DNA from: Ruditapes philippinarum
Lineage: Eukaryota
Direction: 5' to 3'
DNA length: 64,000 nt
Assembly (NCBI RefSeq): GCF_026571515.1
Contig: NW_026860085.1
Coordinates: 124,001-188,000, forward strand
The position numbers were made by a program, and so were the translations under genes. The notes under the pieces were generated by a model. It worked only from the letters and a program-made list of their open reading frames with translations, did not search any database and was not told the origin of the DNA. Position 1 is the first letter of the stretch, and every line of letters starts with the position of its first letter. Shown here one piece after another: positions 27,201 to 50,840 of this stretch.

Positions 27201-30200
27201 AGAAAACATCTTGCAAGTTATCTACCTTCAAAATATGAAAAACATTTGTCAATAAATAAAGGCTGTAAAAGTGTAGAAATCTATTTTAGAACTGGTGACC
27301 TTGACCCAACTGAACCATAACTCCATCCAAAGGAGAAGACCTCAATTCCATGTTCCTACCAAATATAAAAGACATCTTTCAAAAGAATAATGTTAAAACA
27401 CCTGTAAACATGTAAAAATCTATTTTGGCATTGGTGACTTTGGCCTTTACCCACAGGACCCCCAATTAAACCCAAAGCAAGAGGACCCCCCTTGGCATGT
27501 TTGTATTAAACATGAAATACATAATCTTAACAATAAAAGCTTAATGAGCAAAAATGTTATAAAAAATTCACACCAGTGACCTTGACACTAGAGACCCTTT
27601 ACTCCATAAAAAATACACGGCCATTAATGGTTTTCACCTACCAGATATGGAAGATATCATTAAATAATTTTTTAAGATAAATCCAACTTACCGGAATAGG
27701 TTAACCATACAAGGTCCTATTTTCAAAGTGAAAAAAAAGGAATATAACTTGGGAAAATGGATGGCAATCATGAACTTTTTCTAAATAAGTAAGCTTTAGG
27801 CTATAAGACTACAAAGTTAAGTGCCCTCAAGGTAAAGGCGTTTTTTTTCTCCATAATCATGCATGTGTATGTGCTTTTGCACGACCTTTCATAGTGATTT
27901 TACTGTATTTTAAATTGTTTCCATATTTATAATATAAGTTTCTAACTTTAAGCTACTAGGCTGCCGACTCTAAGCTGTTAGATTGCCAACTTCAGGTTGC
28001 AAAGCTGGCATCGATAGGCTGTTAGGATGTTAGGCGACTTCCTCAGGATACTAGGCTACCAACGTTAGGTTAACAGGGCGTTAGGCAAACTCTTAAGGTC
28101 CAGGTCGTCAGCAATTTAGGCTTCCTCTTCCGACAGCGAGTCAATTTGCCTCCTCAGTCAACTAGGCCATCAGACTGCCACCTCAGGCAGCCTGTCTCCT
28201 CTGCCATTTTACAGACACAATTGTACTAAACTATTTACAGAACAATGTCAATTTTGCAGTTTCATTCAAATAGTAGACAATTGTATCAATATGTACAATG
28301 TACATGTACTTGTATAAGATCAGCTAAAAATCGAACGCAAATCAATATACATTTATTTACAAGATGAGTCTTATCGCCGCCTAAATTGTAGCGCAGTTCC
28401 ATATATAATAAATTCACTCGCTTTCAAATTGAGTAGGCAGATTTAATTAATATGATCCAACAATAAAACTTGAGTTCAACATAAAATTACATCTTGCGAC
28501 ATTTAACGGTAGTGTTGCGACATTTAACGGTAAGGGAAATTCGTGCGACATTTAACGTTAACATTGCGACATTTAACGTCAAATGATTTTGCGATATTTA
28601 GCGGCGGTTGCGACATTTAGCGTCAATGGTGCGACATTTAGCGGCAAGTGCGACATTTAGCGGCGTTGCGACATATAACGGCGCCACAGGGACCGACAGT
28701 TAAGCAAAGAGTTCGTCATTCTTTGAAATAAAATATAAATATATTATTCATACGACCATTTTGGAAGCATTCTTTTTCAAAATTTAAACAATAATTGTAT
28801 GAAATCCAGGCAAAAGCCTATAACGAAATTAGAATACTAACATAGATCAGATGGGGCTCTTAAAGCTACAGTCTCACTTACATCCCGGCAGAGCCCCGGC
28901 AGAGCCCCGGCAGAGCCCCGGTAGACGTCCGGGGTGATCCGGGAACGACCGGGGTACGACCGGGAACAACCGGGGTACATCCGTAACTCTGCCGGCAACG
29001 TCCTGGATGATCCGGGATGATCCGGGAACATCCGGCATTCGACCCAGGATGGAATAAAATATTTAATATCACCGGGGTGTTCCGGGATGATCCGGGAAGG
29101 TATAGCTTTGCCGGCTTCATCCTTTGCTCTGCTGGGAACGACCGGGGTTATACCGGGAAAGCACCGTAGCTCTGCCGGCACAAACCGGGGATGATCCAGG
29201 GTATGATATAGCCGGTAGAGCTACAATAGTGCTACGGTAGAGCCCCGGTATATGCCGTCAGAGCCCCGGTAACTACAGGCAGAGCCCCGGAGGATAAAGG
29301 TAGAGCTACGGTTGATCCCGGTAGAGCCCCGGCAAAGCCCGGATCATTTCAAAAGAATAACGACAATTTGCGATGATTGTACTTGTTTGTATTAAAAGTC
29401 TTCCCATTTCCCTTCTATCCAGTATGGCATAAGGATTTTTCAGAAAATCATCATGAATTACTATTCTGGAACAATAGATATTATATTAAATAAAAATTAT
29501 GTATCAATGTTATCATTTTCGGGCGTTTTCAATCCACCGGGGTTCTACCGGGGCTCTGCCTGGATCGTCCTGGGCTCTGCCGGGGCTCTGCCGGGGCTCT
29601 GCCGGGGCTCTGCCTGGATCGACCTGGGCTCTGTCTGGGTCAACCGGGGCTCTTCCGGCGTCATCCGGGAACAACTGGAGAAGCACCGGCATGAACCGTA
29701 GCTTCACCTGGGCTCTGCCTGGATGATCCGGAGCGCATCCTGGGTGGTTAGTAGGGAACTACCGTAGTGCTGCCGGTGTAAGTGTGACCGCAACAATAAT
29801 TTCATCCCGGATCGTCCCGGATCATCCCGGTAACTTACCGGGATGGTCCTGGGCTCTGCCGGGAGTAAGTGAGACCGAGGCTTAAATCAGAAAGATAAAC
29901 AAAACAATAAAATAGACTAAAAATGAATTGAAAATCGTAATCTTAAGATATTTTGCGCACATGTTATTGGTCTAGACCTACATCAAATGGAACATTAATC
30001 TCGATTAAAAATATTTCCAGTCCGTCGTGTAAAAACACAACGGAGTCCCTTTTAATGCAGAATTTTATAAGCAAGTAAATATAATTCATGCGCTTTGTCT
30101 AAATCCTTTTCTGTGACAATGCCAATGTATGTTGACTGATTTTATAAGACAGTTCCATTGGCGCGATTTGGGTGGTTACGGTCGTTGATTTAAAAAAAAC

Positions 30201-32901
30201 AATTGCCCCTCATCGCAGTTGGTTTGAATCCCGACAGGGATTTTGCATTCTTTCATGTGAGGAAGTTATCTAGCTAGCTTACATAACCTTGGTTGTTCAT
30301 CTCAGGTGCCCGTTCATGCCCGAAATAATGCAAGGGAGAGCACCTGAGATCTTCATCCGCCAGTAAAGCTGAGAAGTCGCCATATGACCTATAATGTGTT
30401 GGTGCGACTTAAAACCCAACTAAAAATAAATACTAGAGAAAATAAAAGGAAACGAAAACTTGAAACAGCACATTTGGATAAATCATTTCTTTTACTTCTT
30501 TATTTTCATAGATTTATATACTCAAGAAAATGCCAAGAAATCAAGAAATTTAAAATGGGAAATCTTGTTGGAAACACAGATATTGCAATGTTTGAAAAAG
30601 GTAAACCAAGCATTTATTACACGGATATATATCCAGTCTTCGTTTTTGAATTTGAAAAATGAACATGTCAAGCTATTAATGAATACATAAATGTTTTTAT
30701 CTTATAAATTTTATTTCTGAAAGAATATATAAGATGCTGCAAAATGTAGAAATGATTGTTCAAACAACACATAGACGCTTGAATTTTTCAATCAATTTCC
30801 TGATACAATGAGTTTGTCCGGTGGATTTGCTTTTTTTTAATTGGAACAATCCATTCTTATATGTAATCATATATCTATATAGGTTGTTCAATATAAAATG
30901 CGAAATTTAACTAGACTACATGTATATACACAAAAAAGAATTTGGTCAGACTGTACTTTACCTGAATGTTTGGTAGGCAAACACATTGTTTATGATCCGA
31001 ATAAAATATTGAAATATTTAATAGATTTATATGGTGGCATATTTCTGCCACCAGATAACCTGATAACTATCTAGTTAGTTATCAGGTTAACTAGTTGCGT
31101 AACTACTTAACCTCTTAATTAACTAGTTAGGTATCAGGTTAACTAGTTACGTAACTAGTTAACCTCTTAATTAACTAGTTAGGTATCAGGTTAACTAGTT
31201 ACCTAACTAGTTAACCTCTTAATTAACTAGTTAGGTATCAGGCTATCTGGTGGCAGAAATATGCCACCATAGATTTATTATAATGTTACTGTTATTTAAT
31301 ATATTAAACACATTTAAATGTTTAGTACGTCCTCTTTACAAATGGAAAATTCATAGAGCGATAGTTTCAAGGTGGCGCGATAGCTCAGTTGGTTAGACCA
31401 CTGACTGTCACTCCTGAGGTTCCGGGTTCGATCCTGGGTAACACCCTTGGGATTTTTCAGAGACACTTTCAGTGTTTCCCACCTACCTAGAGGTTTACTG
31501 GTAAGAAACCCAGGTAATCCTCGCATGTATCAGTGCTATACACTGGGCATGTAAAAGAACCAGGGGGTCTTTTCAATAAGAGCTAGGGATTGGTTCCCGG
31601 ACTCCATTGTATCTCATAGCTGTCTCTAGAGTCTGGTGAGGTAAGGATCCTACTGGAAATAAGTGCTTGCACTTTCGTAGGTTATCCTTGACCGCCCGGT
31701 CTAAAGAAAATCAATATCGATCAATCAATCAATAGTATATTCGTGTGTTATAGTTCTTTAAACCTGCTGCTACCCATGCGACCGGTGCAGACTGCAGACC
31801 AATATCATCTGGCACATTAATTGGGTCTGAGCATGGTCTGTACTGTTCGCTATTCAGTTAGTAAACATTTTGAAATTTAACCAGAAATGTTGTCCAGATT
31901 GAAAGATATACGTGTTCATTTAAGATATACAGTATAGCGGAAAAAGTACTTTATTTGATTTATATCTATTATTACATTCTGTATTTCTATATAAAATGTG
32001 ATGGGTTACATGAATTGAAAATTAAAACATTAATTATGATACTTTTTTGTATTACACAGAAATGGATGATGGGAAAACGGAGCGTATAATGTTTTTCTCA
32101 GAGCGCCCTGAAGACTATGTATTCTTTATGTCCTGCACGGATATGAAGACGTCACCATACGCGTGTAGAGATTCTTATTATGTCACATTAGATACAACAC
32201 ATGACCCACCAAATCAGTTTCCGTGGGCCGATGCAGCAAATGAACTAGAGTCCAAACTTAGCATAACTTTTGAGGATCCGAGATTTATTTTCAACTTCGT
32301 ACTCTTGCGTAAGTTTTTTTTTCATTGTATGTTAATCAATTTGTGAAACGTCTGTGTAATAGATGGAAATTATGTTGCATACATAGATTTTAACTTCTTG
32401 TTTGTATTTTCTATGCAATACTTTTGCAGAAACTTGTATTCTGGAACCATTTTGGAAGAAAAAACTGTGTTACTAACGTCTCAACCACATGAAACTGCAT
32501 GTCCTTGCCTTTCACAATGCTCTGTGATTTTGTTTCCATTATTCATAATTTTCGTTATATGTAAGCGTTATCAGCTAAATCTAAATTGTATTTCAACATA
32601 AACTAGTATGGAAATGATTTTAATGATATTTACCTTCTATGATAAAAGAAATCAACAAAGCTTAGAAAAATCCTAATCAAATATTGCTATATACAGAATC
32701 CTGTTTTAATTGTTTGAGGAAGTTTCTGAAATATATTTTACATTTATAAGATATATCTATGGTACTTTATACACGTGCTTACATTTTGTTGACAACTTTG
32801 TGAAAGGCTTTAAAATACAACGATGCTATTTGTTTGCTGTAATTGCACTGTTAGATTCATATTTCTTTAATTTTATTGCAGCTTGTGCTAGAAGGTCATG
32901 A
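21287..32901 (+). CDS. Secreted ~788-aa protein: signal peptide, N/S/D/E/H-rich repeats, Thr-rich linker, divergent lipocalin (RBP4/ApoD-like) C-terminal domain
   Basis: GT-AG exons 21287-22904, 23586-23845, 24546-24676, 30512-30600, 32060-32308, 32882-32901 total 2367 nt, in frame with phases 1,0,2,1,1. N-terminus MKFNRNCLFCVILILTISFSEA. C-terminus ...DYVFFMSCTDMKTSPYACRDSYYVTL...LLPCARRS*. The gap in intron 1 could hide an extra exon. Confidence 0.8.
22070..22700 (+). repeat. Coding 30-bp (10-aa) degenerate tandem repeat, consensus ~[IV]EHSDVPAN[VG]
   Basis: IEHSDVQADV IGQSDVPSNH IEHSGVPVNG VEHIDVQANG VEHSVFPSNV IEHSDVPANE VESNEVPANV. Confidence 0.85.
22983..23412. other. Assembly gap (N run)
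   Basis: Run of n. Confidence 1.
23432..23535. repeat. Compound (CATA)n/(CACG)n microsatellite
   Basis: Directly visible next to the gap. Confidence 0.95.
23940..24075 (-). mobile_element. tRNA-derived SINE fragment
   Basis: Minus strand ggggagcggttgcctcgtggttaaggtgtctgcc...gagttcgagccc (A/B boxes); related heads at ~1790-1830 (-), ~13070 (+) and ~60365 (+). Confidence 0.6.
25913..26100. mobile_element. Palindromic MITE with GAG...CTC ends and 4-bp TSD atat (Sola2-like), nested
   Basis: Long IR arms (gacaaaaccaacataatgggtttgcga...tcgcaaacccattatgttggttttgtc); internally deleted relative of 47621-47855. Confidence 0.85.
26198..26530 (+). mobile_element. Degenerate tRNA-derived SINE (Deu/Nin-domain-like), nested
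   Basis: tRNA-like head (gacttgtaacct...ggttctattcccgggctggc) followed by ctttcggatga...ttggcacgttaaagaa. Confidence 0.5.
28864..29882. mobile_element. GC-rich non-autonomous PIF/Harbinger-like element
   Basis: TAA on both flanks; imperfect TIR agctacagtctcacttac.. / ..gtaagtgagaccgaggct; 11-bp subrepeats (ccggcagagcc) inverted between the two arms around an AT-rich centre. Confidence 0.75.
30160..30430 (+). mobile_element. tRNA-derived SINE (Meta-SINE-like), degenerate copy
   Basis: Reverse-complement homologue of 14505-14778. Confidence 0.8.
31030..31271. mobile_element. MITE with TATGG...CCATA ends and 6-bp TSD (IS3EU-like)
   Basis: TIR tatggtggcatatttctgccaccagata / tatctggtggcagaaatatgccaccata; TSD gattta; interior of ~55-bp self-palindromic tandem units. 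Confidence 0.8.
31371..31733 (+). mobile_element. tRNA-derived SINE (Asp-like head)
   Basis: A box tagctcagttgg, B box ggttcgatcc, broken acceptor stem, gcatgtaaaagaacc core, (tcaa)n tail. Confidence 0.8.
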
Positions 32902-34576: not shown

Positions 34577-37500
34577 CTATTTACATTCCTCTAACGATAT
34601 ACCCGACCTGTTGGGGAAATACAAAATATAGATGAAACTCTGAATGTGACGGGTATACCAGTTATATTGACAAAACGATGGTTCGTTGAGATTGTATACT
34701 TATACATGACAGCTAACGTTTTTCTTGTCTTTAATAAGTAGCAGAGAATTTCTCATTTCACCGATGTATTCTAACTGTAACAAAACATTACAAAAATATT
34801 TAATTGTATTATGACTTAGGAGATAGTCTGACTAGATTTGCAACAAAAAGAAAGAAAAGATGAAGTATCTCAACTTACAAATGACAGTTTGGTGACGTCT
34901 TGATATAAACAATGCCATTTCTCACTATAAACGCTTGCAGGTTTGGACACGTGCCATCAACAGCTGTTGTACCACTCGATGTTTGTATTTCAAACAAGTT
35001 GCTGTAAATGATTTTCGGAAATTCTCTTTTAGCGATATCATTTAAGTCTAGTCGGAAATTATATTTCCGACTGAATGTACATGTACAATATCGTAAATAG
35101 CTCTATGCAAAATATGTAAATCTGAACAGAATTATATGTAAGAAAAAACACAATAATATATCACGATGAGAGAAAAGGAAAACAAACATATATCTTCTTA
35201 CGATGCTCCTTTTCCCTGACTGTTTGGCCCCGTACCCCTTTTTCAACTGCTTTTGGCAAATTCTTAAATTAACAGACCCTACCAACTTTTATAAACATGA
35301 ATTTGAATATCCCTTACTTTATAACAATAAATAACAAAGATAATGGTATAGGTCATATTTTGTAATTCACATTAATATGGTGCATATAAATTACAACTTT
35401 GCTCACATTGTGCAACATGTAATAACAATCAATAATGTTTTCTATTAAAGACGGTGCTAGCGGGTGCTTTAACTGTCTTTAAAGATCCTGTAATACAATT
35501 TTTTTATGGTTTTATATCATAAATATGATGCTCAAGTTAAGATTTATCAATTTTGTAAGTTCCAAAAAGCATTATTTATAATGATATTACCGAATTTAAC
35601 AGTTCATGTAAATAAAGAGAGGTAATAAAAGCTTTATTTTTTATAAAGTCTAATTCAATTGTTTCAATAAGAAATGAATGCATATATTTTAATGATTAAA
35701 TATAATATGTACAAATATTTGTAGTACATATTTTACATATTCTTCGATGTCTGAAAACTGTTTTATAAGCATAAATTTATACATATATATAATTTCACTT
35801 GGTATACAACCTCAATTAAAACGTAAAGGATCTTTAATTTATCATGATGATCATATAGCCTTTGAACATTTACAATTCTTGGTTGTCATTATCCTAGAAA
35901 TGTTTTTTAAGAATTTAACTGATATCAAGAAGTCCATACGTATCATATTTGATTCTATCTACAAATATGATGTTTAAAAGAAACCTGCCCCGTTAAATCA
36001 ACGTTAAGATGAAACCTGCAGAATTGTTGTTGTTGTGTTTGCGAATTTGTTCATAAAAGACAATGAAACGAGCAATTGCTGACATTAATGTCCTCCACCA
36101 AGTTACAGCGACTTGAACAGTACACTTTATTCATATTTAATTGGAATAGGTGATCCGGACGGATCAACCAAATGTTACAAGAAAATTATGTAAAAAAGGT
36201 ACATTTCAGTTTTATTGTTTTGTAAAATTATAATAAAAGATAATGGTATAATTACATTTTTTTTCAAAATTATGATTTTTGAAGACGTTACTTACAACTG
36301 ACAGTTCATCTCAACATCAAAGATAACTTTATTGCCTTCAATACGGAACGGAAAACGTGCACATGGTCCATGCTGTATTCCTTCAGGAACTTCAGGTTGT
36401 TCACCACCATCTGGTCCTGCCATTCCTTCACCCATTTCATACTGAGAACCAATGCTGCTTGGAATATCTACATCGGGCTGATCACTTCCAGTTTCAACTC
36501 CTGAAGTACTTTTGTTATATGGGCTACTGCCGCCAGAAGCAATGCTTGAACTTTGTGTTTTGACTATAGGATTAGTTTTACCTTGACTAGCATTTTCATT
36601 TGAGCCTTTACTTGATGTCCCCTTTGCGCTAGCATTCGAACTAGCTGATAATCCCCTAACTGTTTTGACATTTACTTGCTGACCAGTTTCTAAGCCGGAA
36701 TTAGCTGGTTTATTACCATAACTAGCCTCTAAGCTTTGTGGTTTTGAACTTGCTTTGGTATCAGAGTTTGATGGTTTACCCGCTGATCCATCATAGACGT
36801 CAATTGGTATATTCTGAGATACTGTATCTACACCAGTAGATGTTTCCTTTGATTCAGCAACGGTACTAGATGATTCATTCATAGACCAATTACTATAGCC
36901 TTTAGACTGATCATATGATCTTATTTCAGGGACAGTTAATTGTTTACTAGATGTAGCGGGCTTGGCTAGTTTGGTTGATTTTTTGGGAACCCCAGGCCTA
37001 AAAACCTTAGATGATAAATAATTTTCCCATTTCTGAGCTAGGGGAACTAGTATTTTGGTTTTCCCTACCCCATTAAACTGACCTTTTTGACTGATTTTTT
37101 AACTCGATCCTTTTAGACCGATCATATGATTCCATTTCGGAGCCAGATAATTGCTCAGAAGCTGTAGTGACTGAACTATTGGACGTTTTGGTAGACTCCA
37201 CACTTGATTGGTTGGATTCCGATTTGGGAGCAGTTAACTGTTCGCTAGTTACCGCCTCTTTCGAGTTTATACTTGATTCTGTGTCGTTATAAGTTTGCTC
37301 GACTTTAGAAGCAGATTGTTGCGCACTTGATCCATTATTTTTACCAAATTGTATTTGGCTAGATCCGGTTTTGGAGACAAGTGTATTTGAATTAGATTTA
37401 GATTTAATTGTTACTATATTTGGTTGTATATCATAGTTTGTGGCTTGTCCGCCTAATAAAGTATTAGGTTGTCCTGACTGTACAGGTAAAGTCGGTACAT

Positions 37501-38542
37501 CATATGATCCCGGGCTTGTGTTATTGGATTGATTGCCTGTCTCTGTTTCGTAAGAAGTATGTTTATCTCCAATACCAGCTTCAGAGGCAGTTGACATAAC
37601 ACCACTTTCAGCTTCAGTTTCTGTTGTATTTACTTCCGATTTAACTACAGCACTTGCTGCTTTTACTTCAGAAGTCACCGCTGGACTCATTTTTGATTTG
37701 GGATCAGTTAATTTTTTAGAAGAAATGGATTCAGAACTACCTTTAGTATAACCGGTGCCTGTGGCAGGTTTATTCGAAGACTCAGCAACGTAGTTGATTT
37801 GTTTCCCAGATTGACTGACATTATTTGCCGTAATTCCATCTTCTGCATAATTTATTTCTCCAGTAACAGAACTAGAGACATCAGGAGTGCCAGAATCTTG
37901 TACACCTGTACTTGATACCTTGTTAATTACTCTAGCAAACACAACACTGTTCACTGAAAATTACATCGATACATGGTGATAATTGTCCAATTAAGCGAAT
38001 ATGACAAATATTACAAAGTCATTCTAAACATGATTAAGAATTCCTTAAACAAGTATTTTTGAATAATTTTTAAACATTTTGCTATTATTTAAAAGTCAAA
38101 TAGTAGATTTCCAATTTACTGAACTTTTCTATAAATATATTCAAAATTATATACCTAAATGTGATACTAAATCAATCTGTTCGTCCAATGTCTCGTGGTC
38201 TACCTTTTTAATTTTTCTTGGCTATATTTACAGTTATGTCATTTTCAAATCTAAACAAGTATCATGCAAACAATATTTTTTCCACATTTATTTTGACCGT
38301 TTAAAAACTATGGTAAATTTTTAAAAATTTTCCATAAAAATTTTCCCCTTTTCAAAAATATATACACATAAACTTATTCTGGGGTTTTTATTGTGTGGGG
38401 TTTTTCAAACCTTTAAAAATATTTTCAGTATAGGGTTTTGCTTTTATTTATTTAAATAAATAAAAGTATTTTTTAAAAATAGTTTTACCCAGCAACAATT
38501 GAACAAGTTTAAAACCTTGTTTAAAAAATCCACCCGGGCCAT
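34577..38542 (-). CDS. Gene A: secreted Ser/Thr/Gly/Asn-rich protein with two C-terminal C-x19/20-C modules (distant paralog of B and C)
   Basis: Large exon 37953-36296 (broken by a noisy patch ~36950-37100) ending GPCARFPFRIEGNKVIFDVEMNCQ(L), phase 2. Probable small exons 36015-35985 and ~35262-35202. Clean 123-nt exon 35001-34879 (NLFEIQ...GTCPNLQAFIVRNGIVYIKTSPNCH). Candidate last exon 34607-34577. Signal exon ~38542-38489 lies in poor-quality sequence. Ends uncertain. Confidence 0.65.
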
Positions 38543-39739
38543 CGTGTTTTTTCTAAAAAGTAAAAAACACAAGAAACAATGGTTTTGTTCAAAGTAATTT
38601 TCCCTTTTTTTTTTAAAATATATTGATATGTTTTAAATATTTTCTAAAAAGAGGCGGAGCCAGTGTCACGTTGAAATCATGCAGAGATACATCAGATGAA
38701 ATAGATAAATAAAATATACTTGCATCTGTCAAGAAAAGTAAAATGCCTTTGTAAGATGGCATTTTATTTATGACACGACTTCAAAGGAGTTTTGCAGTTT
38801 GTTCAATTATCTTTACAATTAACACAATTTGTGATCATTTTTATAATACAATTAAGTAATGTTGTAATATGGACTCGGCACTTTTGGTCCGTTCCTGCAT
38901 TTTTTTTTTACATTTTATGTATTTACAAAGTCAAGGTTGGCATGTTTTGAATAACGTTTTGAATGACAAACGTTAGATATTGTTACTTAACGGCATGCTG
39001 TACATCTATAAATAGATGATGTCCTTACACCATCTTTAAGATGCCATTTTAGAAATTATACCATTTTTAAATTCATAAACAAATGAATAAGAGGAAAGTA
39101 AGTTAAAATTTATGTTTGTGACCTTTAATTTAGAAATGTGCCAAAAAACCCTAATTAATCTCTCAGTTACGCGACATTTTCAAAATTACATATGACATGT
39201 TTTAAAACATTACAACATTCAAAAGTATTGTCACTTACTATCATTCATCACGTATTTATAGTGTAAAATTACAATGCTCTGCATGAAGTCGTGTCCAATA
39301 TATGCTACTTAACTGTATTAATTTGTCAAAAATGACTTAATCGTTGATTTTAAGACTTTATTTTCATCACAGATTACGTGTCTTAAAATCACAAACAAGA
39401 TTATCTTGCACGACGTAAGTAGAACAACGTAAAGCAATGATAATAGTAAAGGTAAGTTTACCCTCATTATTCATGCACATACATGTACGTGTATTGTTAC
39501 AATGTTTATCATGTTTATATAATATAATAATAAATTATGAAGAGATTTCATTGTAATTTTGCGGAATTTTCTTTGAATTAATAGGTTCCAAAATCAATCA
39601 AATGAACACTGTGTTTTCCTGAACATATTAGCTAATGAATAAAATAGACCGTAAATACGAACATGAACATATCATCCTGCATTAATTATGACAGTAATGT
39701 TAGTTAAAACAATGAAAACAGAATATTGCATTCTATGTC

Positions 39740-39950
39740 ATGAACTTTATAGATAAATGTGATACAATATGTTGTGGACAATCTATATTCGGTTTAACCT
39801 GTTTTTGAACTGTATACTTATAAATGTGATACAATCTGATGTTTAGGTAAATGTAATAAAATCTATATTAGGTTTAATCTGTTCATTAAATGTATAGATG
39901 AATGTGACACACTGTCCGTCAGGCTGAACCTGTTCATGAACAACTGTAGA
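39740..39950. repeat. Degenerate short tandem repeat
   Basis: Recurrent aaatgtgatacaat and ggtttaacctgtt...gaac motifs. Confidence 0.5.
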
Positions 39951-40778
39951 CCAGCAGACCATTGTTGTATCTCTAAGTCTAGTCCGCTTTACTATGAAAG
40001 GTAACCATAACAATTATACTGGTTTTCTCCCTTCGAATGTATTCTCTTGTTTCTTGTTGCGTTTTTGTTTCAAGAATAAGGTAAATTATATAAAAATGCA
40101 TGCGTTCCGCTGTTTATACCGCCAGTAACAAGGGCAGCAATGGAAATCAGGATTCATTCTCTTTTTTGTGTTAACGTTGATACTGCGTTGCAAGACATGG
40201 TCAATACTCGTGATTGTATTTTATTTAATAATCTTATATTTTATGATTACGATCTTTTGTGATCATGTGGTATTTGTTTCCGGTAAAATTGGGACACAAT
40301 TAATGGTTTTTGATAATGTTTTGTAATATCTTTCAATATTTGAATAGTAAATATAAACCATTGACCAGGCAAATATTTTTATATTCTAATTGTACATTTT
40401 TTTCAAATGTATAGCCCTTCTACTAAGAAATCGTGACACATTTTTGCATTTACATCATAAATATTGTCGCATTAAAAAAACTTCACAACACTATTTCAGG
40501 AGATAAGCTACTTCTGCAACACAGCTCACAATTGAAGCAAGGTTGCCTTATGCTGAAAGTTTAATTGGAACATTGGCTCGAGTCCTATATGGATCATAAC
40601 CATGTTTAGATGAAAGCAGGATCGTTGAGAAATTTTAGTTTACTATCGAGCATAAATAAATAATGTAAAATCTTAATAACAACAAGGTAAAATTTGTTTT
40701 ATTTTAATAACATTAATTCAAAATACAACATGAAAAAATATGGAATTATATACAACAAGAAAGCTCACTTCTCTCAAC

Positions 40779-43700
40779 TTAACGCCGTTGAACCTTCTCT
40801 GACTTTATTATAGGCTGTCTGAAAACAACAAACAATGATTTATGACAAAATCATCTTAAAAAAACAAAACCTAACAATGTTTCTTAACTTAGATATATGT
40901 ATTTATTTGTTTTATGGTAAATTTTAGTCCAAAGTAATTGTAACACCATTGATCAACATTGTGTTGGGCAGATATTACCGAAAATTAAAATAGATATCTA
41001 GATAATTTAATTTCTCTGTAAGTGTTGTCGCTTTGCAAAATTCATAAAGCTACTTTTAAAAAATCATTGGTTACTCTATTCAGTAAAGCTAAAAAAGCAA
41101 TACTATACGGTTAATCAGTAACTCTGTCTATACTCAGTTTGGTTCTACAATACCACTTACCTCCCCTTGCTCTTTTTGTTCCGTCGTTGTATGGTCCTGT
41201 CAGAGATAAATAATATCGTAGATAAATCTTACATGTGATTTCCGGTTATACTGTTAATTAGTCACAAAAAGATTATAATTATATCAGTAAAAATATAATA
41301 ATTATGTAAAAACAGATTTGTTACTAATTTTCAAACGGTAATTGCATAGCAACTACCTAGCAATATACATGCACATATGAAAATAAGTGCGTTAGATGAA
41401 ATTATGCTTAATAATATCTGCCATATATTTGGATCGGAATATCGGTCCCGAGGTGACCGCCCATGGGCGGGTGACCGAGGGACGGATATTCCGATCCGAA
41501 CTGCAAACATATGTCAGATATTTTTTCTTGCATATTCTACCATATTCCATTATATTTTAAATTCTTTATCTTTAATTTCAATGGAAATTTATATCATTAC
41601 AACCGTAACTTTTTTCTTACAACAGCGTATGAATTACACAACTTCATTCATAACGGTAAAATGACGTCATCCTAAGCGTGCCATTGTACAGCACGCGACT
41701 CATCTGGCACCCCCCATGCCAGATGAAATTTCCGGCATGGGTAAACCTAACGGAAACGCCAGTCTGATATGCAAGAAAAATCTGTCTTATGTAACTAATG
41801 ATATACTAGGTATATCCAACAAATTAAAACCTTATGTTATACTTATTAAATAAGCCGACCTCATGTGAAATGTCAACTATAATATTAATTAAAACACTAC
41901 TGTAAATCCGACGTGTATTTCCGTTCGTCCTACATCTCTCCTTGTCATATATATTTTTTTATATTTTAAATATGCATTTCATATGTGGCTGTTGCACTAT
42001 GAATACGTAAACAAATAAACAAATTGGAAACGTAAACCATTGTTATAACAGGTTTTTATTTCTCGATTGAGTCTCAGCTGTGGAGACAATCATGTACATA
42101 TATGTATCACGAATTCAAACACAATCAATTATTCTCTTATTCTTTGTTGTACATTCAAAGAGCCTACAACTAATTGCATCATTTTTGTATCTTTATTTTT
42201 TAAAATTACTTTTACTGGAGAGGAATTGATATAAGTATTGTTTTACTTGTTTTCCAATCCAGTCTGAATTACACTGTTGTGAAATGTTTGTAAATGTTAT
42301 TTTATGTAAAACTTATTGAATAAGTATTTTTTTATATAGAAGTTTAAACTAAACTAAATTGAACAGGAATTTTTAAGAGGAAAGCATTAAATGACAATTA
42401 TCAAACATGGGTATGATACAGCGTTAAGAAAGATATTATAATAACTTACATGATACAGTCACCTGTCCGTATAGTATATGTCCCCCTTCCTGATCTCTTA
42501 GCAACAACTTCCCCACACATATCAACCTCTCGACCTGGTGTAGGACCAACTGATACACGTCTTTCTATATATCTTGATAAACAATAAAAGCTATTATTAT
42601 ATATCTAATAAATCTAACCAATTCATAATCTGCATTTGTACCTCGTGACCGTCCAATATATTCCCGCATTGGATCAAAAAATAATTATTTTCATATTTGA
42701 CGGCTGGGTACATGTGCACTAAACGATGCTCTAACAGATGAGTTGTGGTTTTGGTTGTTATACTGAACGTGTTGGTGATGGTGGTAGTGGTTTTGTTGCT
42801 GATAATGGTGGTGGTATGGATGATGACATCGGTGGTGGTTTTATTGGGGATAATGATGATGTAATTTCAAATTAAACGAAAGATATAAAATAAAAAGGTT
42901 ATTATACTTTTTACTGTACAATACGGAATATATTTGGACTCGGCTCGTCCAACGTGACTTTTCAAACTGTGTACTCGCCCAAATATATTTCCATACTGTA
43001 CAGTAAAATGTATAATAACATATAAATAAATTTTCTAATAAATTCTAGGGTTTCCCAAAGATTCTATGGTACATGGAGGGAATTTGATCTTTTTTTTCCA
43101 TTTGGCTCATGAGTCTGGATTCCAACAAAACGGACAATGCCATTCACTATATATTTGCCTAAAATCAGTAATTTTCTGTAATAAGACTTATCCTCGACGT
43201 GTAGTTCTAGAAACTTAAAAAAAAGATAATTATGTACATGTATTTACCTTTCTCTTTCCACTTCAGCCTTTTCCCCACTTTTACTTTTCTTCTTTGTCTC
43301 TGATTTTCCTTCCTTTGATTTTTTTTCTTTTTTGCCTTGTTTATCCTTTGTCTCTGATTTTCCTTCCTTTGATTTTTTTTCTTTTTTGCCTTGTTTATCC
43401 TTTGAAGTTCCCTTTATAGCTCCCTTATCCTTAGATGATTTAGCGAGGTACACGGTTCTAAAACAATGAAAGTTCACACCATTTGGTTAGTGACATTTCA
43501 ATACAATGTTTGCTGATACAAAAACTTTTACCCGAAACCTGCTGGCACCGGAAGTGACTAAGTTTTGTCACCAATATATAGCGTCAGGCCATCCTGAACA
43601 TACGCAAACAAGTAGTTCCAAAAATGGAAACTGACCGAGTCCATTACGTAAATATAGCAAAAAGAGGTTATACCGGTTGATTTTGTCCAAATATTGTTAC

Positions 43701-45526
43701 AAGAACTGTCCATGCTTATAAAGATTTTGACAGGTTATATGCCCGTATATAAACGGTTGTTTGGAAATATAACCCGAGTTGTTATATAACCTTTGATTTA
43801 CAGTCATATGACCTCTCATAAATTTTTGTAACGAATTTATAATACAGCAATCTTTTTTAGAGAAAAAAAAGATATCTTCATAAATTGACAGCAGCCGTAT
43901 AAACCTATAAAAACGTCATGATTATCCAATGAAAAGCGACGTTACAAACGTAAAGTATTATAAGACAAAACATGTATATACAGGTATCAAGGCATGCAAT
44001 ATTGCAGCTTGCGCTCCAATATGTACAAAACAAGTTAATCTTTATATCTACTTTTTAAAAAGTTATCATATTTTGATTTACTTAAGACATTTACATACTT
44101 AAAATCAAACAAAGTCCAACCTATCAACCTGTATCAATATGATGAATACTCGAATTTAAAATAATATATTAAATAAAATGTTTATAATGGTGATACTAGT
44201 ACATTTGAGAAACAGAGTGAGAGAGTCATTGCTTGCCTTAAAGTAAAATACCTGTCAACTTACATCATAGTAAATAGTTTTTCAAGAATTTTGAATTTTA
44301 GTAGTTACTTACATAAGACATTCTTTTTCGTCCAGTGTGAAGGTCACTGTTTCACTTAACTGATTGTATTTACCGACAGGACAGGGCGATATGGGTGTTG
44401 CTGTTGTAACGGTAGATGTCGCTTTGGTCGTTGCCCCGCTTGTTGTTGCTTTAACAGGTGCTTTGGTAGTTGTTGCTTTAACAGGTGCTTTTGTAGAAGT
44501 TGCTTTAACAGGAGCTTTGGTAGTTGTCGCTTTAACCGGTGACGCTGTAGAAGTTGCTTTGACCGGTGACCCTGTGGATGTGACTTTAACAGGAGCTCCA
44601 GTAGATGTGACTTTGACAGGTGCCCCGGTAGAAGTTGCTTTAACAGGTGCTTTGGTAGTTGTCGCTTTAACCGGTGACGCTGTAGAAGTTGCTTTGGCCG
44701 GTGACCCTGTGGATGTGACTTTAACAGGAGCTCCAGTAGATGTGACTTTGACAGGTGCCCCGGTAGATGTGACTTTGACAGGTGCCCCGGTAGATGTGAC
44801 TTTGACAGGTGCCCCGGTAGATGTGACTTTGACAGGTGCCCCGGTAGAAGTGGCTTTTACAGGTGCCCCAGTAGAGGTGGCTTTTACAGGTGCCCCAGTA
44901 GATGTGACTTTCACAGGTGCCCCGGTAGATGTGGCTTTTACAGGTGCTCTGGTAGATGTAACTTTCACAGGTGCCCCGGTAGATGTGACTTTTACAGGTG
45001 CCCCGGTAGATGTGACTTTGACAGGTGCTCCGGTAGATGTAACTTTCACAGGTGCCCCGGTAGATGTGACTTTTACAGGTGCTCCGGTAGATGTAACTTT
45101 CACAGGTGCCCCAGTAGATGTGACTTTGACAGGTGTCCCTGTAGATGTGACTTTTACAGGGGTTGTAGGAGATGACTTGGTAGGTGACGCTGACGTTCCA
45201 GCAGCCGAGCCAGGCGCTATTTTTTGAGTAGCTTCTTTTTGTCCTGTTGTTAAATGTGTGACAACTGAAAAACAATAAAAAAATATCAGCCCCAACTGTC
45301 TCAGCTCTAAAAATGAATATAAGCTTAGAGTTAAAACAACAAAAATGTTTGCAGAATAATCAGTTCTATCTTAAGATTATTTAAAGAATTTAAATTTCGA
45401 AAACAGTAAACGTGCATTTTTCTAGTATTCTTTTAATATCAGATAATATATTCAAACTGTATAAATCAAACGTTTACCAAAAAGTCCAAACACCATAAGA
45501 CACATATAACTTGCTGTTTTCGTCAT
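40779..45526 (-). CDS. Gene B: secreted 469-aa protein with a (PVKVTSTGA)n mucin-like block, Lys-rich exon and two C-x19/20-C modules
   Basis: GT-AG exons 45526-45478 (MTKTASYMCLMVFGLF), 45264-44313, 43457-43248, 42572-42450 (YIERRVSVGPTPGREVDMC...GDCI), 41196-41161, 40818-40779 (QPIIKSEKVQRR*). Total 1410 nt, in frame, phases 1,2,2,2,2; AATAAA on the minus strand near 40700. Confidence 0.88.
41410..41780. repeat. Hairpin-forming non-autonomous element (possibly Crypton-type)
   Basis: IR aatatctg.cat...ggatcggaatatc / gatattccgatcc...atgtcagatatt, plus ttttcttgcatat...atatgcaagaaaa. Confidence 0.5.
44440..45165 (-). repeat. Coding 27-bp minisatellite (~27 units)
   Basis: Visible directly; 135-bp higher-order duplication (tagttgtcgc at 44521 and 44656). 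Confidence 0.95.
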
Positions 45527-47507
45527 TTTATTTTCCAACTTTCTTGAGTGCTTCCACGCAGTAAATACAACATAATGTTTTATTCGTTTGTTTTTGTACT
45601 ACTGAGAGCGCGTAATTCCGGGATCTGATTTACATATTTTTAAAATATAAATTTACATAAATGTCACTGTTTTTATAGAAATTTAAGAAATATGAATAAT
45701 AAAATGCTATAAACTTGTTTATAAGTGTCACATTGGTGGTTCTCTTTTCAAATCACTAGTTTTTATTGTTGTTGTTGCTGCTGCTGCTGCTGTTGTTGTT
45801 GTTGTTATACCTTGCGTGAGCTAAGCATGTTACACCATATATGTACATGAACTCTTTTTCTCAGGTTTGTAAATGAAACATAATTTCCACCGTACAGCCA
45901 AAAATTGATAAAATGTTTTGATGCAGACGTAGACAAATAACGTTATTCTATATATAAATCATAAACACTGTTTAGCATAACTATTTTGACATGTGCTCTC
46001 ATGTGCACAAAATCTGGTTGACAATAGAATCCAGTTTTGACCAGTTCTAAAAACGCTATCAAAATATGAAAATATGAATACAAGGTATAGTGGACCATTA
46101 ATCTATAATGTCGAATCATGAAGAAAATGGTTGGCGAGGTCCCTTACGAAATGTACTGCAGCATTTTTAACCCCATGACACACGAGCATAATAGAATTTT
46201 CTGGGATTTTTGTACACTTTTTGGTTACAAAGTGTTGCTTTGTGATTTCATTTTTTTTTTTTTTTTATTTCTTGTGTTTTTTCTTAATTGCTGATAGTGA
46301 TCGAAAAAAATGTAATGTGATTTTATGTAATGATCTAATATGTAATCCTAACTTTTAGTTGTTTGCGCATTGAGTGCATAATCTTTAGTTGAATAGTAAA
46401 AAATAGTTAACATCCGTTTTCTTTGGAAGTTACTGCATTGGATTAATTGTGTGTCAAAATGGAACAAGCAGACGGTAAAAGCATGCAACAAAGGATTATT
46501 TAACGAATTTTATCAGTGAAACATGACAGGTGTCGTAGACAGAATGATGCGGGATACCATCGTAATTTCGTTAATGCACATTGTCAAAAACCATGTGATA
46601 CAGTAGAATCATATTTCACAGATCATAACCGCATAAATGGGTTTGTGTTTTTATTTTCATATGAAACACAGCTTATTGTATGTTTATGACTGGTAGATAT
46701 CAAAATTTCCTTTAAGAATTAAAGGAAAATAACTTATCAGGTTCACTTACAACTTGCAATGTGAGGACAGTTGAGTTATTGCTACTCTTGGTTCAATTTT
46801 GTTGCAGTTACATTTAGTTGAAAATTTCAGATCAATACAGTTTTTGTTTGGGGTAAGAAAATAAATAACGCATGGGTTTGTGATAAACGGTAAAATATCA
46901 TCCCTTGTAAAATTATTACTAAGATCTCAGGTAACAGTATTTATCTCGGGATGATATTTTACCGATACCCAAAAACACATGTCTTATTTATATAATATTA
47001 CTTATTGACTATAAATGCTATTTTCTTTTCAATTAAACAGTACGTGTGATTTTGATATAGATAAACATTGTGAAAAATGTTATCAAGATATGGAACGTGT
47101 TATAAACAAATTTTTCTTTGACGACAAGCGTATGGTTCATCTCACTTTTACTTCGAATGGACAACAATTGTTATGTCACATGATTTCTTATAAGACTGAT
47201 AATTATGCAAAAGTAACATGAATGGTGTATATATCTGTAACAATATGCTGTCATTACATATTTGATTGCTGCCGTTGCCATACATTTTATATATTTCTTT
47301 TGACATTTTTTTATTACATTTCATTTTGCCAGTTGGTTTACACTTAAACCATGTGCCCATGAACTTAAAGAACAACAAGGCGAGATTAGATTATAAAGTA
47401 AAACATTTATTTTTGTAAAGACGAGACAACAATTTTATGTACATTTTTTTGTATAAATTTGGATTTATATACAGTTAATTATCATATTGGTAAACAGGCG
47501 ATTTCCC

Positions 47508-50500
47508 TTAAACAGGTGGATTTGTCTCGGTCCTGATCATTGGAACAGATGATCTGAAAAAAGAAAAAGACATTTTAAACGTTTTATCATGAGTATCATA
47601 CTAATGGATCAGATACATTTGAGCCGCGTCATGACAAAACCAACATAATGGGTTTGCGACCAGCATGGATCCAGACCAGCCTGCGTATCCGCGCAGTCTG
47701 ATCAGGATCCATGCTGTTCGCTTACCAACTCTATTACAAGTAGAGAAACTGATAGCGAACAGCATGGATCCTGATCAGACTGCGCGGATGCGCAGGCTGG
47801 TCTGGAGCCATGCTGTTCGCAAACCCATTATGTTGGTTTTGTCGTGACGCGGCTCATTTGTTTTCTGATATACTTTTTATGAGCATTGTGTTGTTTTCGA
47901 TCTATTTCACTACTCAAATATTTTGCAAACATACTTTATTATCGCATGTTACTTTGTGCTGTTAAAATAAAAGGTCTTTCGTATAATATAATAAAACCAT
48001 GTTATTGTTTTGCTTTATGGAAAAAGAGTTATACTTTTTCAGGATATCTGCCCCTTATAAATGTTTTACGAATAAAAATATGAGCATCTTACTGTGTATA
48101 ATTAAACAAACGATTCTAACGTTTTCATTGTTTTATAAGGAATGCAATATGTTGTTTTCCCCTCAATGTCGTCATGCAAAACAGCCTACGTAACTGTTAT
48201 AAAGTGTAAATTGTAACATGACGTATTCAATGTATCATGAATAACATATATAAAATTATTTACCCATTTTTGCCCTTCTTTGGTTTCTTCACGTACCTGT
48301 ATGAAATAAAAATGTACATTTATATGGTGACATAATGCTGTATATTTGTTAAACACAAGAAACAATGTTTGCAGTGGCTTACACATTATAATGTAAGCTA
48401 AGAAATAAATTCAAAACATGCTGCGGTATTGTAACTTGCTAGAATCGTTGCATTTGTATTGGCTACAAACATAATTAAAAAAAAAACACCGATTTTTTTA
48501 TAGAAGAGCTTAACTAAACTTACAGACGGGCGGTTCATTAACTAAATGCTTTGATTATATATCTTAAATTAACTTTCCTTTGAACAAAAATATTTTCATA
48601 CACCTGAGCCGTGCAAAACAGTTTAACATTAACATAACTATTAAAATGATATATTCACAATTGCTGAAGCTAATGCTAGTATAATTATAAACATGTCAAA
48701 TTCTTCATAAAATCATACAACCAAAACACTTAGCTAACTAAAAATACGGCTGCTTCGTGTTCCAGTTTAATGCCAAATGATTTATCATTTAACAACAAGG
48801 TTATAAATTAACTGTGAGACAACAATTTTTTTATGGTCCTCAAAATATTTTTTTCAATGGTTTTCCTGTTTTAGATAAAATAAATACTTACATGACACAA
48901 TTTCCGGCTTGGATAGAGTAAACATCTTTGCTATATTTGCTGACTTGTACATCGGCACACATGTCAACATCACGTCCTGGGATTGGACCGATAGATACGG
49001 ATTTTTCTATTAACCTGAGATAAATTAGTTAAAGTTTTATATTCATTATTTCCACATTTCTAATATTTGGAAGACATAACAATAAGACTAGTTTTCAACA
49101 ATAGATTAACTCCTTGTCATGTAGCATTATATTTGGTTTAAAATAGCATAAATGCTATACAAAGTATACTATGTTTCTTAAATGAAATGAAAATAATAAA
49201 AGATATAAGAAATTATGATCGAGTATTAGATCTATTAGATAACAAACATAATAACTGCAAAGAATGTAAATTTGAAACCTTCAGATAAAACCTGATAATA
49301 CCATTCCAATGGTATATCTATTGCAAAGAAGACTTTGTAAATTCATGATGAATTGCGAATGAATAAACATATATAACCAAAAAAGACAGTAAATGATTGA
49401 TAGTAAAATATTACGATTTACCTCTCTCCTTGCTCTATTGGTTCTACTTGTTCCGCACTTTTGCCTTTAGGATTTTTTTCTTTCTTTGCCTTTTTCGGCT
49501 CCTTTCCTTTCTTTGCTTTTTTCGGCTCCTTTTCTTTCTTTGCCTTTTTCGCTTTCTGTATTTTCTTTCCTTTAGGTGGTTTTGAAAGATAAACAGTTCT
49601 GAAGTAGATAAGGTGTGCTATAAATATATATATCAAATAAGTCATCAAAAGACACAAATAAAATGGAGTGTCTTTTCAGCATACATTTGAATAATATCAT
49701 ATACTTAATACAATCTACTGTCAATCAAACACATCCAATTTCCCACATCCGTACAGAAGATCAAAACATAAGTTAAAATGAATTACGATTGGTGTTATTC
49801 TATAACAAACCATCAAATTATGAACAAACGTGCGTATATATTTGACCTAAATACTTGAAATGTATTACATCATATAGATATTGACAATTATTCTGTGATC
49901 GCTAAAGCTTTCACTTAATTAGAAAAGATCGCTTTCGGAATATGTTTGCGAGTTAAGAAGAAAAAGCAAAAAAAATGTTGCTTACATTTGGCATTCTCTT
50001 TCATCAAGTATGAAGGTGACTGTATCTGTAATATCGTTATATTGTCCATCGGGACATGGTACGCTTGCGCGTTCTGCAGCCGCTGTCGTCTGCGTGTCAG
50101 CAGATGCCGCTGTGGTTTCTGTACTGGTTCCGGTAGTCTGTGTGGCGCTTGGTGTTGTTGCAGCCTGGGTACTAGAAGACGTCGCCGCTGTCTGGGTGCT
50201 GGACGAACTTGCTGTTGATTGTGCACCAGTACTTGCTGCCGTTGATTGTGCACCAGCATTTGCTGCCGTTGATTGTGTACCAGTATTTGTTTGTGTTGAT
50301 TGTGTACCAGTATTTGCTTGTGTTGATTGTGCACCAGCATTGGCTGCTGTAGATTGGGTTTCGGAAGAAGTCTGTGTGGATTGTGTAATTGTGGCCTGTG
50401 TAGTTTGTGCGTTTTCCTGAGTTGTAACTTGTGCAAATGTAGATCTAGTAAACACTGAAAGAAAGAAGAAAAAAACTCCAGACAATGCACGTTGTACTTT

Positions 50501-50840
50501 CCAATGTTTAGAAAAATATAGTTATATTACATGTAATATTATTCTAAATACTTTAGCGTAATGCAACAATAAAACAGCATATATGTTTAAAACATCTATA
50601 TAAATATATGTACAAAATAAAAATGTTGTAACGTCGAAATGTTGAAATATACGTTATCTATCATGAAAAGTTTTGATCTACTTTGTTCAACATCCTAGTC
50701 TTTTATGTAGAATGTTATGATAATCCTTGTATTTAATAAAAAAAAAACAATTCAAACTTATTTTTATAACATATAAATATTTTACCTAAGAGTCCAATTA
50801 TCAAGAAGCCGGTATTTGACATTGTCTTGAAGATTGTCAT
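47508..50840 (-). CDS. Gene C: secreted 300-aa paralog of B with Thr/Ala/Gln-rich block, Lys-rich exon and two C-x19/20-C modules
   Basis: GT-AG exons 50840-50786 (MTIFKTMSNTGFLIIGLL), 50454-49986 (...PCPDGQYNDITDTVTFILDERECQ), 49598-49422 (TVYLSKPPKGKK...), 49014-48892 (LIEKSVSIGPIPGRDVDMC...GNCV), 48296-48264, 47553-47508 (SSVPMIRTETNPPV*). Total 903 nt, in frame, same phases as B. Confidence 0.88.
47621..47855. mobile_element. Palindromic MITE with GAG...CTC ends and 4-bp TSD attt (Sola2-like)
   Basis: ~100-bp IR arms; attt on both flanks; lies in the last intron of gene C. Confidence 0.88.

What the first reader, a model, noticed from the sequence alone, without database searches (positions are those of the whole stretch)
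34577..50840. Tandem three-gene family with an unrecognised duplicated C-x19/20-C module fixed to a phase-2 intron
Seen: genes A, B and C have very different N-terminal low-complexity blocks, but each ends in two Cys pairs. Spacings are A 19/20 (CARFPFRIEGNKVIFDVEMNC, CPNLQAFIVRNGIVYIKTSPNC), B 20/19 (CPVGKYNQLSETVTFTLDEKEC, CGEVVAKRSGRGTYTIRTGDC) and C 20/19 (CPDGQYNDITDTVTFILDEREC, CADVQVSKYSKDVYSIQAGNC). In all six cases a phase-2 intron falls in the second codon after the last Cys. The second module sits on an exon of exactly 123 nt in all three genes. In B and C each module is followed by a short beta-like strand, a Lys-rich loop and another strand. Inference: a small disulfide-pinned beta domain arose by internal exon duplication and then gene triplication, and each copy carries a different disordered 'material' tail. 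I cannot match it to a known domain such as chitin-binding type 2, EGF, WAP, Kunitz or VWC, so it may define an undescribed family of secreted structural proteins.
Basis: partly seen in the sequence, partly recalled or inferred. Interest (0 to 1): 0.82.

Follow-up and report, generated by a model that had tools for sequence, protein, structure and literature searches.

The report
Clam mucin-like genes, undescribed Cys-hairpin module
Three neighbouring genes of the Manila clam encode secreted mucin-like proteins that each end in two small cysteine-bracketed units matching no known domain, a real but species-restricted family whose function is untested.

Summary
All six C-x19/20-C motifs lie on the minus strand where stated. 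Each is followed by 5 nt and GTAAG, a phase-2 donor. The second motif sits on a 123-nt exon in all three genes. This pattern occurs exactly six times in the window, against 0.045 expected.

The genome is Ruditapes philippinarum. Gene C is RefSeq XP_060606489.1 ("mucin-2-like", 300 aa). A 974-nt Logan contig encodes a 97% identical 302-aa protein, so C's junctions have indirect transcript support.

B and C share one six-exon plan: signal peptide, 27-nt-repeat Ser/Thr-rich exon ending in module 1, Lys-rich exon, 123-nt module-2 exon, a 33/36-nt mini-exon and a short last exon. B and C are old paralogues under purifying selection. A shares only the Cys spacing and the exon/intron plan, with no detectable sequence similarity.

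Nothing matched in Pfam, PDB sequences, the ESM Atlas or a profile search of 1.84 billion proteins. AlphaFold models are of low confidence.

Best reading: a lineage-restricted secreted mucin-like family. Its conserved cationic C-terminal end is probably built from disulfide-stapled beta-hairpin-plus-strand units. Internal duplication and a structural role remain inferences.

The parts
50786..50840 (-). Gene C exon 1: ATG and first part of the signal peptide, phase-1 donor
   Evidence: Matches the N-terminus of P0001.
49986..50454 (-). Gene C exon 2: end of the signal peptide, Thr/Ala/Ser/Gln-rich mucin-like part (27-nt repeats at 50210-50356), module C1 at 49991-50056, phase-2 GTAAGC donor
   Evidence: Protein P0001.
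49422..49598 (-). Gene C exon 3 (177 nt, phase 2-2): TVYL strand followed by a loop that is 49% Lys (27-nt repeats)
48892..49014 (-). Gene C exon 4 (123 nt, phase 2-2): a strand, the GPxPGRxVDM motif, and module C2 at 48897-48959
48264..48296 (-). Gene C exon 5 (33-nt mini-exon, phase 2-2): YV strand plus basic stretch
   Evidence: Present in P0001 and P0005.
47508..47553 (-). Gene C exon 6: last 14 codons and the stop
   Evidence: Present in P0001.
45478..45526 (-). Gene B exon 1: ATG and first part of the signal peptide, phase-1 donor (inferred)
   Evidence: Same plan as C.
44313..45264 (-). Gene B exon 2: 26 copies of a 27-nt (9-aa) Pro/Thr/Ser/Val/Lys repeat at 44449-45160, module B1 at 44318-44383, phase-2 GTAAGT donor
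43248..43457 (-). Gene B exon 3 (210 nt, phase 2-2): TVYL strand plus Lys-rich loop (54-nt unit x2.1, 100% identical)
42450..42572 (-). Gene B exon 4 (123 nt, phase 2-2): module B2 at 42455-42517
   Evidence: AlphaFold of this exon gives three strands.
41161..41196 (-). Gene B exon 5 (36-nt mini-exon, phase 2-2, GTAAGT donor), inferred counterpart of C exon 5
40779..40818 (-). Gene B exon 6 (inferred): 12 codons and the stop. Its P-I-I-K-S-E matches P-M-I-R-T-E in C. AATAAA lies at 40703.
   Evidence: The frame closes at the stop.
38720..38762 (-). Gene A candidate first exon (tentative): ATG and a hydrophobic start, phase-1 but weak GTATAT donor
   Evidence: Not confirmed.
37083..37953 (-). 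Gene A large Ser-rich exon: phase-1 acceptor as in B and C, phase-2 donor, followed by an 85-nt intron
36296..36997 (-). Gene A Ser/Gly-rich exon ending in module A1 (36301-36363), phase-2 GTAAGT donor
   Evidence: The relative P0006 is 96% identical over the last 52 aa against 82% upstream.
34879..35001 (-). Gene A 123-nt exon (phase 2-2) with module A2 (34884-34949)
   Evidence: 90% aa identity to the second copy on contig C602.
34316..34354 (-). Gene A candidate 39-nt mini-exon (phase 2-2, GTAAGT donor), counterpart of the B and C mini-exons. The last exon of A is unresolved.
   Evidence: 36/39 nt identical to C602 (2 synonymous, 1 non-synonymous change) against about 77% in the intron just upstream.

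Best explanation
The region holds a small, lineage-restricted tandem family (A, B, C, all on the minus strand) in Ruditapes philippinarum. The genes encode secreted mucin-like proteins.

Each protein has a signal peptide split by a phase-1 intron. A long, fast-evolving Ser/Thr-rich part follows, tandemly repeated in B and C and probably O-glycosylated. The C-terminal end is conserved and built from two units. Each unit is a roughly 20-residue beta-hairpin bracketed by two Cys. The turn lies exactly in the middle: 8-3-8 residues in the x19 modules and 9-2-9 in the x20 modules. That geometry puts the two Cys opposite each other, where a disulfide can staple the hairpin. After the second Cys comes one residue, then a hydrophobic residue whose codon is split by a phase-2 intron, then a short third strand.

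In B and C the strands are separated by poly-Lys loops that are themselves expanding 27/54-nt repeats. This gives a C-terminal part with pI about 9.6, joined in gene C to an acidic/neutral Ser/Thr-rich part (pI about 4).

I infer that the hairpin-plus-strand units pack into a small beta sheet. This sheet would be the only folded part. Together with the Lys loops it would act as the attachment or cross-linking end of the glycoprotein, binding anionic partners electrostatically. Candidate partners are acidic secreted proteins encoded next door, sulfated glycans, or mineral and chitin surfaces.

Shown: the genes, their exon plan, secretion signals, conservation of the modules, and absence of a known domain. 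Inferred: disulfide pairing, fold, glycosylation and role.
For: - Motifs and phase-2 donors are verified, and the pattern is far above chance: 6 observed against 0.045 expected.
- C is an annotated protein (XP_060606489.1). An independent 974-nt Logan contig encodes a 97% identical full-length 302-aa protein. It can only be spliced, because the gene spans 3.3 kb.
- B and C have the same six-exon plan with every phase matching and the frames closing. Modules are 58% and 45% identical. dN is 0.29-0.41 with saturated dS.
- For A, the module region is 96% conserved against 82% in the low-complexity part in the relative P0006 (Fisher p = 0.011). Exons are conserved above introns against contig C602.
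- The split codon after each module encodes F, L, I, M, I and M.
- The mature C protein has exactly 4 Cys. The C-terminal part has pI 9.6 and the loop is 49% Lys.
- AlphaFold places strands on the hairpin arms and the flanking strands.
- No known family was found.
Against: - Both structure models are of low confidence (pLDDT 34 and 57), and module 1 was not modelled as a hairpin.
- There is no sequence similarity between module types or between A and B/C.
- There are no expression, tissue, glycosylation or disulfide data.
- B is absent from the protein collections, so its expression is unproven.
- The four Cys could pair differently or between molecules.
Confidence: 0.55

Rival explanations
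1. The Cys pairs do not define a folded domain. They are free or intermolecular cross-linking points, as in the cysteine-bearing ends of polymerising mucins. The region between them is largely disordered.
For: AlphaFold confidence is low throughout. The protein is mostly low-complexity. There are only four Cys.
Against: The positions around the Cys, the central turns and the alternating hydrophobic pattern are conserved between B and C under purifying selection. The symmetrical 8-3-8 and 9-2-9 geometry recurs in six very different sequences.
Confidence: 0.2
2. The C-terminal region is a very divergent member of an already described small extracellular beta domain. Sequence methods miss it because the Lys-rich loops interrupt it.
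For: The searches were limited. The profile search used only the 40-aa module-2 exon. The word search cannot even link B to C. No confident model was available for a fold search.
Against: Pfam on the whole spliced protein at E up to 10 gave only low-complexity noise. PDB sequence and Atlas searches gave nothing. As far as I recall those domains, two C-x19/20-C pairs do not fit the Cys patterns of EGF, WAP, Kunitz, VWC, chitin-binding type 2, sushi or ZP-N. This was not tested here beyond Pfam.
Confidence: 0.12
3. Gene A is unrelated to B and C. Its two C-x19/20-C motifs in front of phase-2 donors are coincidence or convergence.
For: hhalign finds no similarity. A lacks the Lys-rich exon. The order of x19 and x20 is reversed, and the 123 nt are partitioned differently.
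Against: The expected number of such motifs is 0.045 per window, yet A carries two, directly beside B and C and on the same strand. A also has the phase-1 intron in the signal-peptide region, phase-2 introns only thereafter, a 123-nt exon, a 39-nt mini-exon and a hydrophobic split codon.
Confidence: 0.08
4. The proteins are precursors that are cut in the basic stretches to release disulfide-stapled hairpin peptides.
For: Lys/Arg-rich stretches flank the modules in B and C. Single-disulfide beta-hairpin peptides exist in marine invertebrates (own knowledge).
Against: A has no basic loops. Module 1 of B and C is acidic rather than cationic. No classical dibasic sites directly flank the modules. 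The large mucin-like part is unexplained by this reading.
Confidence: 0.05

Closest known systems
Secreted gel-forming mucins (MUC2 type). NCBI names gene C 'mucin-2-like'.
   Same: Signal peptide. A long tandem-repeat Pro/Thr/Ser region encoded on one large exon. Cysteines confined to the non-repeat end.
   Different: No VWD, C8, TIL, CysD or C-terminal cystine-knot domains (Pfam negative). Only 4 Cys. Only 300 aa (gene C; B is about 470 aa by its exon lengths). The name reflects composition only.
Mollusc lineage-restricted secreted proteins with repetitive low-complexity domains, for example the lysine-rich matrix proteins (KRMP) of pearl oysters (PMC4498902)
   Same: Small secreted proteins with a Lys-rich basic region and a modular build. 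They evolve fast and are restricted to a lineage (for KRMP).
   Different: KRMPs are about 100 aa with a Gly/Tyr-rich domain and no mucin-like repeat. The clam proteins have no Gly/Tyr domain. No shell-proteome evidence was found here.
Single-disulfide beta-hairpin peptides such as arenicin or tachyplesin-like peptides (own knowledge, not tested)
   Same: A beta-hairpin whose two ends are tied by one disulfide.
   Different: Those are free cationic peptides of about 20 aa. Here the hairpins are embedded in a larger protein, are followed by a third strand and are partly acidic. This is a resemblance in how it works only, not membership.

Membership tests
Gel-forming mucin (MUC2-like) | VWD-C8-TIL assemblies and a C-terminal cystine knot | tested here: not met
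   Pfam at E up to 10 on all exons and on whole P0001 and P0005 found none.
Gel-forming mucin (MUC2-like) | Tandem-repeat Pro/Thr/Ser domain behind a signal peptide | tested here: met
   27-nt repeats: x26.4 in B and x5.4 in C. Thr 30% and Ser 17% in C. Signal peptides were read from the sequence.
   No Pfam hit of any kind to the C-terminal region.
   Only 4 Cys in the whole mature C protein, as two x19/20 pairs 79 residues apart. The family Cys numbers are from my own knowledge.
KRMP (lysine-rich matrix proteins) | Lys-rich region followed by a Gly/Tyr-rich region, about 100 aa in total | tested here: not met
   No Gly/Tyr-rich region in P0001. KRMP definition from PMC4498902.
Proposed new family (A, B, C) | C-x19/20-C, one residue, then a hydrophobic codon split by a phase-2 intron, twice per gene, the second on a 123-nt exon | tested here: met
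Proposed new family (A, B, C) | Detectable sequence or profile similarity among all members and between the two modules | tested here: not met
   Only B1-C1 (58%) and B2-C2 (45%) are similar. A against B/C, and module 1 against module 2, give hhalign probability below 1%.
Proposed new family (A, B, C) | Common fold with intramolecular hairpin disulfides | tested here: inconclusive
   AlphaFold pLDDT 34 for the whole protein and 57 for the exon. Strand positions fit, but confidence is too low.

The most novel reading that the evidence does not exclude
The hairpin-plus-strand unit (Cys, symmetrical beta-hairpin, Cys, one residue, a hydrophobic residue split by a phase-2 intron, a third strand) would be a previously undescribed extracellular mini-domain. 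It is carried on symmetrical phase 2-2 exons, so it can be duplicated and shuffled. It would tolerate large poly-Lys loop insertions between its strands. The clam would use it as the folded cationic anchor of mucin-like proteins, which co-assemble by charge with the acidic secreted proteins encoded in the same gene cluster to form a secreted material.
Probability: 0.22. Interest if true: 0.6.

Novelty: new variant of a known kind. Interest (0 to 1): 0.4.

Why it matters
Molluscs make mucus, shell matrix, periostracum and adhesives from fast-evolving secreted proteins that are restricted to single lineages. For most of these proteins the only informative part is a small conserved module. Here such a module is defined precisely by Cys geometry and by a strict exon and intron-phase plan. 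It is under purifying selection while the rest of the protein changes freely. This gives a concrete target for expression, disulfide mapping and structure work, and a search key for related clams. It is also a clear case in which gene structure carries a signal of kinship after sequence similarity has vanished. With no data on tissue or function, and with the family seen in one species only, it is of moderate rather than high interest.

Tried and rejected
RNA evidence
No read-level confirmation of junctions was possible.
The DNA and sample of the transcript-like contig behind P0005 and of the JGI contig behind P0006 could not be fetched.

Database searches
- The word-based search with the B module-1 region found nothing. 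It missed even paralogue C, so this blank means little.
- The search with the C-terminal half of P0001 was swamped by Lys-rich words: 8000 candidates, and only C and its allele P0005 were returned.
- Hits P0002-P0004 of the profile search are internally repetitive, unrelated proteins, rejected by eye.
- Two metagenome scans, one with the A2 alignment and one with P0006, found nothing. A first attempt failed because the query was too short.
- Cluster look-ups for P0005 and P0006 gave no accession or sample.
- Literature searches found nothing on these genes.

Own genome
- Profile and protein searches found no further members. The only extra hit was a short second copy of the 3' part of gene A on contig C602. 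It carries a 1-nt insertion before the second Cys of module A1. It is either a haplotig with an assembly error or a decayed copy.

Structure
- No fold search was run, because both models were below usable confidence.

- Joined spliced models of A and B were not built, searched or folded. They were handled exon by exon, by reference. Only C was used as a whole protein, through its database id P0001.

Unresolved
- The terminal exon of A.
- The candidate first exon of A at 38762-38720, which is tentative.
Full report
**Check of the observation.** In each case the second Cys codon is followed by one codon, two more bases and then GTAAG, which is a phase-2 donor in the second codon after the Cys. 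The exon carrying the second module is 123 nt with AG and GT borders in all three genes. I counted the DNA pattern TGY, 19 or 20 sense codons, TGY, 5 nt, GTAAG on both strands of the window. Two hundred block shuffles gave a mean of 0.045 and never more than one. A looser pattern (16-24 codons, weaker donors) added one hit, at 26240 on the + strand. It sits in a 30-codon open frame, and 0.35 hits are expected, so I treat it as chance.

**Organism and gene C.** A profile of the B and C module-2 exons (alignment A1) was searched against 1.84 billion representative proteins. It returned one true hit, P0001 (E = 1e-22). P0001 is XP_060606489.1, "mucin-2-like" of Ruditapes philippinarum. It is the product of gene C, with exactly the exon junctions I had derived from the DNA. 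The other three hits are internally repetitive, unrelated proteins. A second protein, P0005 (302 aa, 97% identical over the full length), comes from a Logan contig of only 974 nt. Gene C spans 3.3 kb in the genome, so that contig must be a spliced transcript. This is indirect transcript support for all five junctions of C. Direct read evidence could not be obtained.

**Gene models.**
- C has six exons: 50840-50786, 50454-49986, 49598-49422, 49014-48892, 48296-48264 and 47553-47508.
- B has the same plan: 45526-45478, 45264-44313, 43457-43248, 42572-42450, 41196-41161 and 40818-40779.
- All borders are canonical. The first intron is phase 1, inside the signal peptide. All later introns are phase 2, and both reading frames close at a stop.
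- The last two exons of B are inferred from their likeness to C. These are a 36-nt against a 33-nt mini-exon with a short hydrophobic start and a basic tail, and a last exon with P-I-I-K-S-E against P-M-I-R-T-E.
- A has a phase-1 acceptor at 37953 and a Ser-rich exon running to 37083. An 85-nt phase-2 intron follows, then exon 36997-36296 ending in module A1, and then the 123-nt exon 35001-34879.
- No Lys-rich exon lies between the A modules.
- Downstream, a 39-nt phase 2-2 mini-exon at 34354-34316 with a GTAAGT donor is the likely continuation. It is 36/39 nt identical to the second copy on contig C602, with two synonymous changes and one non-synonymous change. The intron just upstream is about 77% identical.
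- The last exon of A is unresolved. Its first exon, candidate 38762-38720, is tentative.

**What the proteins look like.** The mature C protein has a Thr/Ala/Ser/Gln-rich part of pI about 4. Its C-terminal 150 residues have pI 9.6, and their central loop is 49% Lys. There are exactly four Cys. The large exon of B holds 26 copies of a 27-nt repeat and that of C holds five. The Lys-rich exons are themselves 27-nt or 54-nt repeats, and in B two units are 100% identical. The low-complexity parts are thus still expanding, while the modules are unique sequence.

**Geometry of the modules.** In all six modules the turn-forming residues lie exactly in the middle. The arrangement is 8-3-8 in the x19 modules and 9-2-9 in the x20 modules, read directly. 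This places the two Cys opposite each other at the open end of a hairpin. The codon split by the intron encodes F, L, I, M, I and M. A short beta-type stretch follows it.

**Selection and kinship.**
- B and C are clear paralogues. Module 1 is 58% identical and the module-2 exon 45%. dN is 0.29 and 0.41, and dS is saturated. The duplication is therefore old and the modules are under purifying selection.
- For A, the only database relative is P0006, a 197-aa open frame on a 1242-nt JGI contig that ends at the same donor. It is 82% identical over the low-complexity part and 96% over the last 52 residues around module A1 (Fisher p = 0.011).
- Contig C602 of the same assembly carries a second copy of the 3' part of A. 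Its exons are 90-97% identical at the protein level and its introns about 84% at the DNA level. It has a 1-nt insertion before the second Cys of A1, so it is either a haplotig with an error or a decayed copy.
- Profile comparison finds no similarity between A and B/C, or between module 1 and module 2 (probability below 1%).
- The kinship of A, and the idea of an internal duplication, therefore rest on structure-level characters. These are the Cys spacing, the intron position and phase, the 123-nt exon, the mini-exon, the hydrophobic split codon, and in C the likeness of the stretch after module 1 to the stretch after module 2.
- With 0.045 such motifs expected per window, two in gene A beside B and C are very unlikely to be coincidence.
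- One nuance concerns the 123 nt. They are partitioned as 52+66+5 in A and 55+63+5 in B and C. The order of x19 and x20 is also reversed in A.

**Known families.**
- Pfam finds nothing for any exon or for the whole spliced C protein at E up to 10.
- PDB sequences give nothing.
- The ESM Atlas holds the protein but offers no related cluster.
- The clam's own 1.4-Gb genome holds no further member apart from C602.
- The NCBI name "mucin-2-like" reflects composition only.
- The blanks have limits. The large profile search used one 40-aa exon. The word search cannot link even B to C. No mollusc genomes other than this one could be searched. Given the saturated dS between B and C, relatives in other venerid clams are to be expected and may simply be too divergent to detect.

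**Structure.**
- AlphaFold on P0001, with the allele and the B exons as separate rows, gave pLDDT 34. It placed strands on the stretch after module 1, the stretch before module 2, both arms of module 2, the stretch after it, and the last exon.
- The 40-aa B exon alone gave pLDDT 57, with three strands and the turn at G-R-G.
- This fits the hairpin-plus-strand picture but is too weak to count as evidence. It is also too weak for a fold search, so none was run.

**Interpretation.** The best reading is a lineage-restricted tandem family of secreted mucin-like proteins. Their conserved cationic C-terminal end is made of two disulfide-stapled hairpin-plus-strand units, and it serves as the folded attachment or cross-linking end of a glycosylated brush. 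The window holds further secreted low-complexity genes: an acidic one at 23586-32901 and a Thr-rich one with an acidic tail at 56738-58455, which has no Cys module. This fits a secretory gene cluster, but it does not prove co-function. The rival readings are listed with their odds. They are intermolecular cross-linking without a fold, a divergent known domain, an unrelated gene A, and a peptide precursor. Function, tissue, glycosylation and disulfide pairing remain inferences.

**Verdict.** The finding is a real family with an undescribed module. It has been seen in one species only and has no functional data, so it is of moderate interest.

Noticed in passing
G000 contig C602 (locus L004, 1-2878): A short contig carries a second copy of the 3' part of gene A: module A1, the 123-nt exon and the 39-nt mini-exon. 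Exons are 90-97% identical at the protein level and introns about 84% at the DNA level. There is a 1-nt insertion just before the second Cys codon of module A1. It is either a haplotig with an assembly error or a decaying duplicate.
   Followed up: partly
window 56738-58455 (-): A further mucin-like gene. It has a signal-peptide-like start, long Thr/Pro repeats, and an acidic Asp/Phe/Trp-rich tail followed by a basic tail. The two long open frames overlap at 57607-57679 in different frames, which points to an intron or a frameshift. It has no C-x19/20-C module.
   Followed up: partly
window 43292-43404 and 49476-49573 (-): The Lys-rich exons of B and C are themselves tandem repeats of 54 and 27 nt. 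The two B units are 100% identical, so the basic loops are still expanding. They share the 27-nt period of the mucin-like repeats in the same genes.
   Followed up: no
window 36998-37082 (-): An 85-nt GT..AG interval joins the two long Ser-rich open frames of gene A in phase 2. It is read here as a very short intron, but an assembly frameshift cannot be excluded without reads.
   Followed up: partly
window 21173-22930 (+): A 585-codon open frame encodes another secreted-looking low-complexity protein. It has a hydrophobic stretch near the start, and is rich in Asn/Ser/Asp/Glu/His with repeated 'EHSDV'-like units. It ends at the assembly gap at 22983-23412.
   Followed up: no
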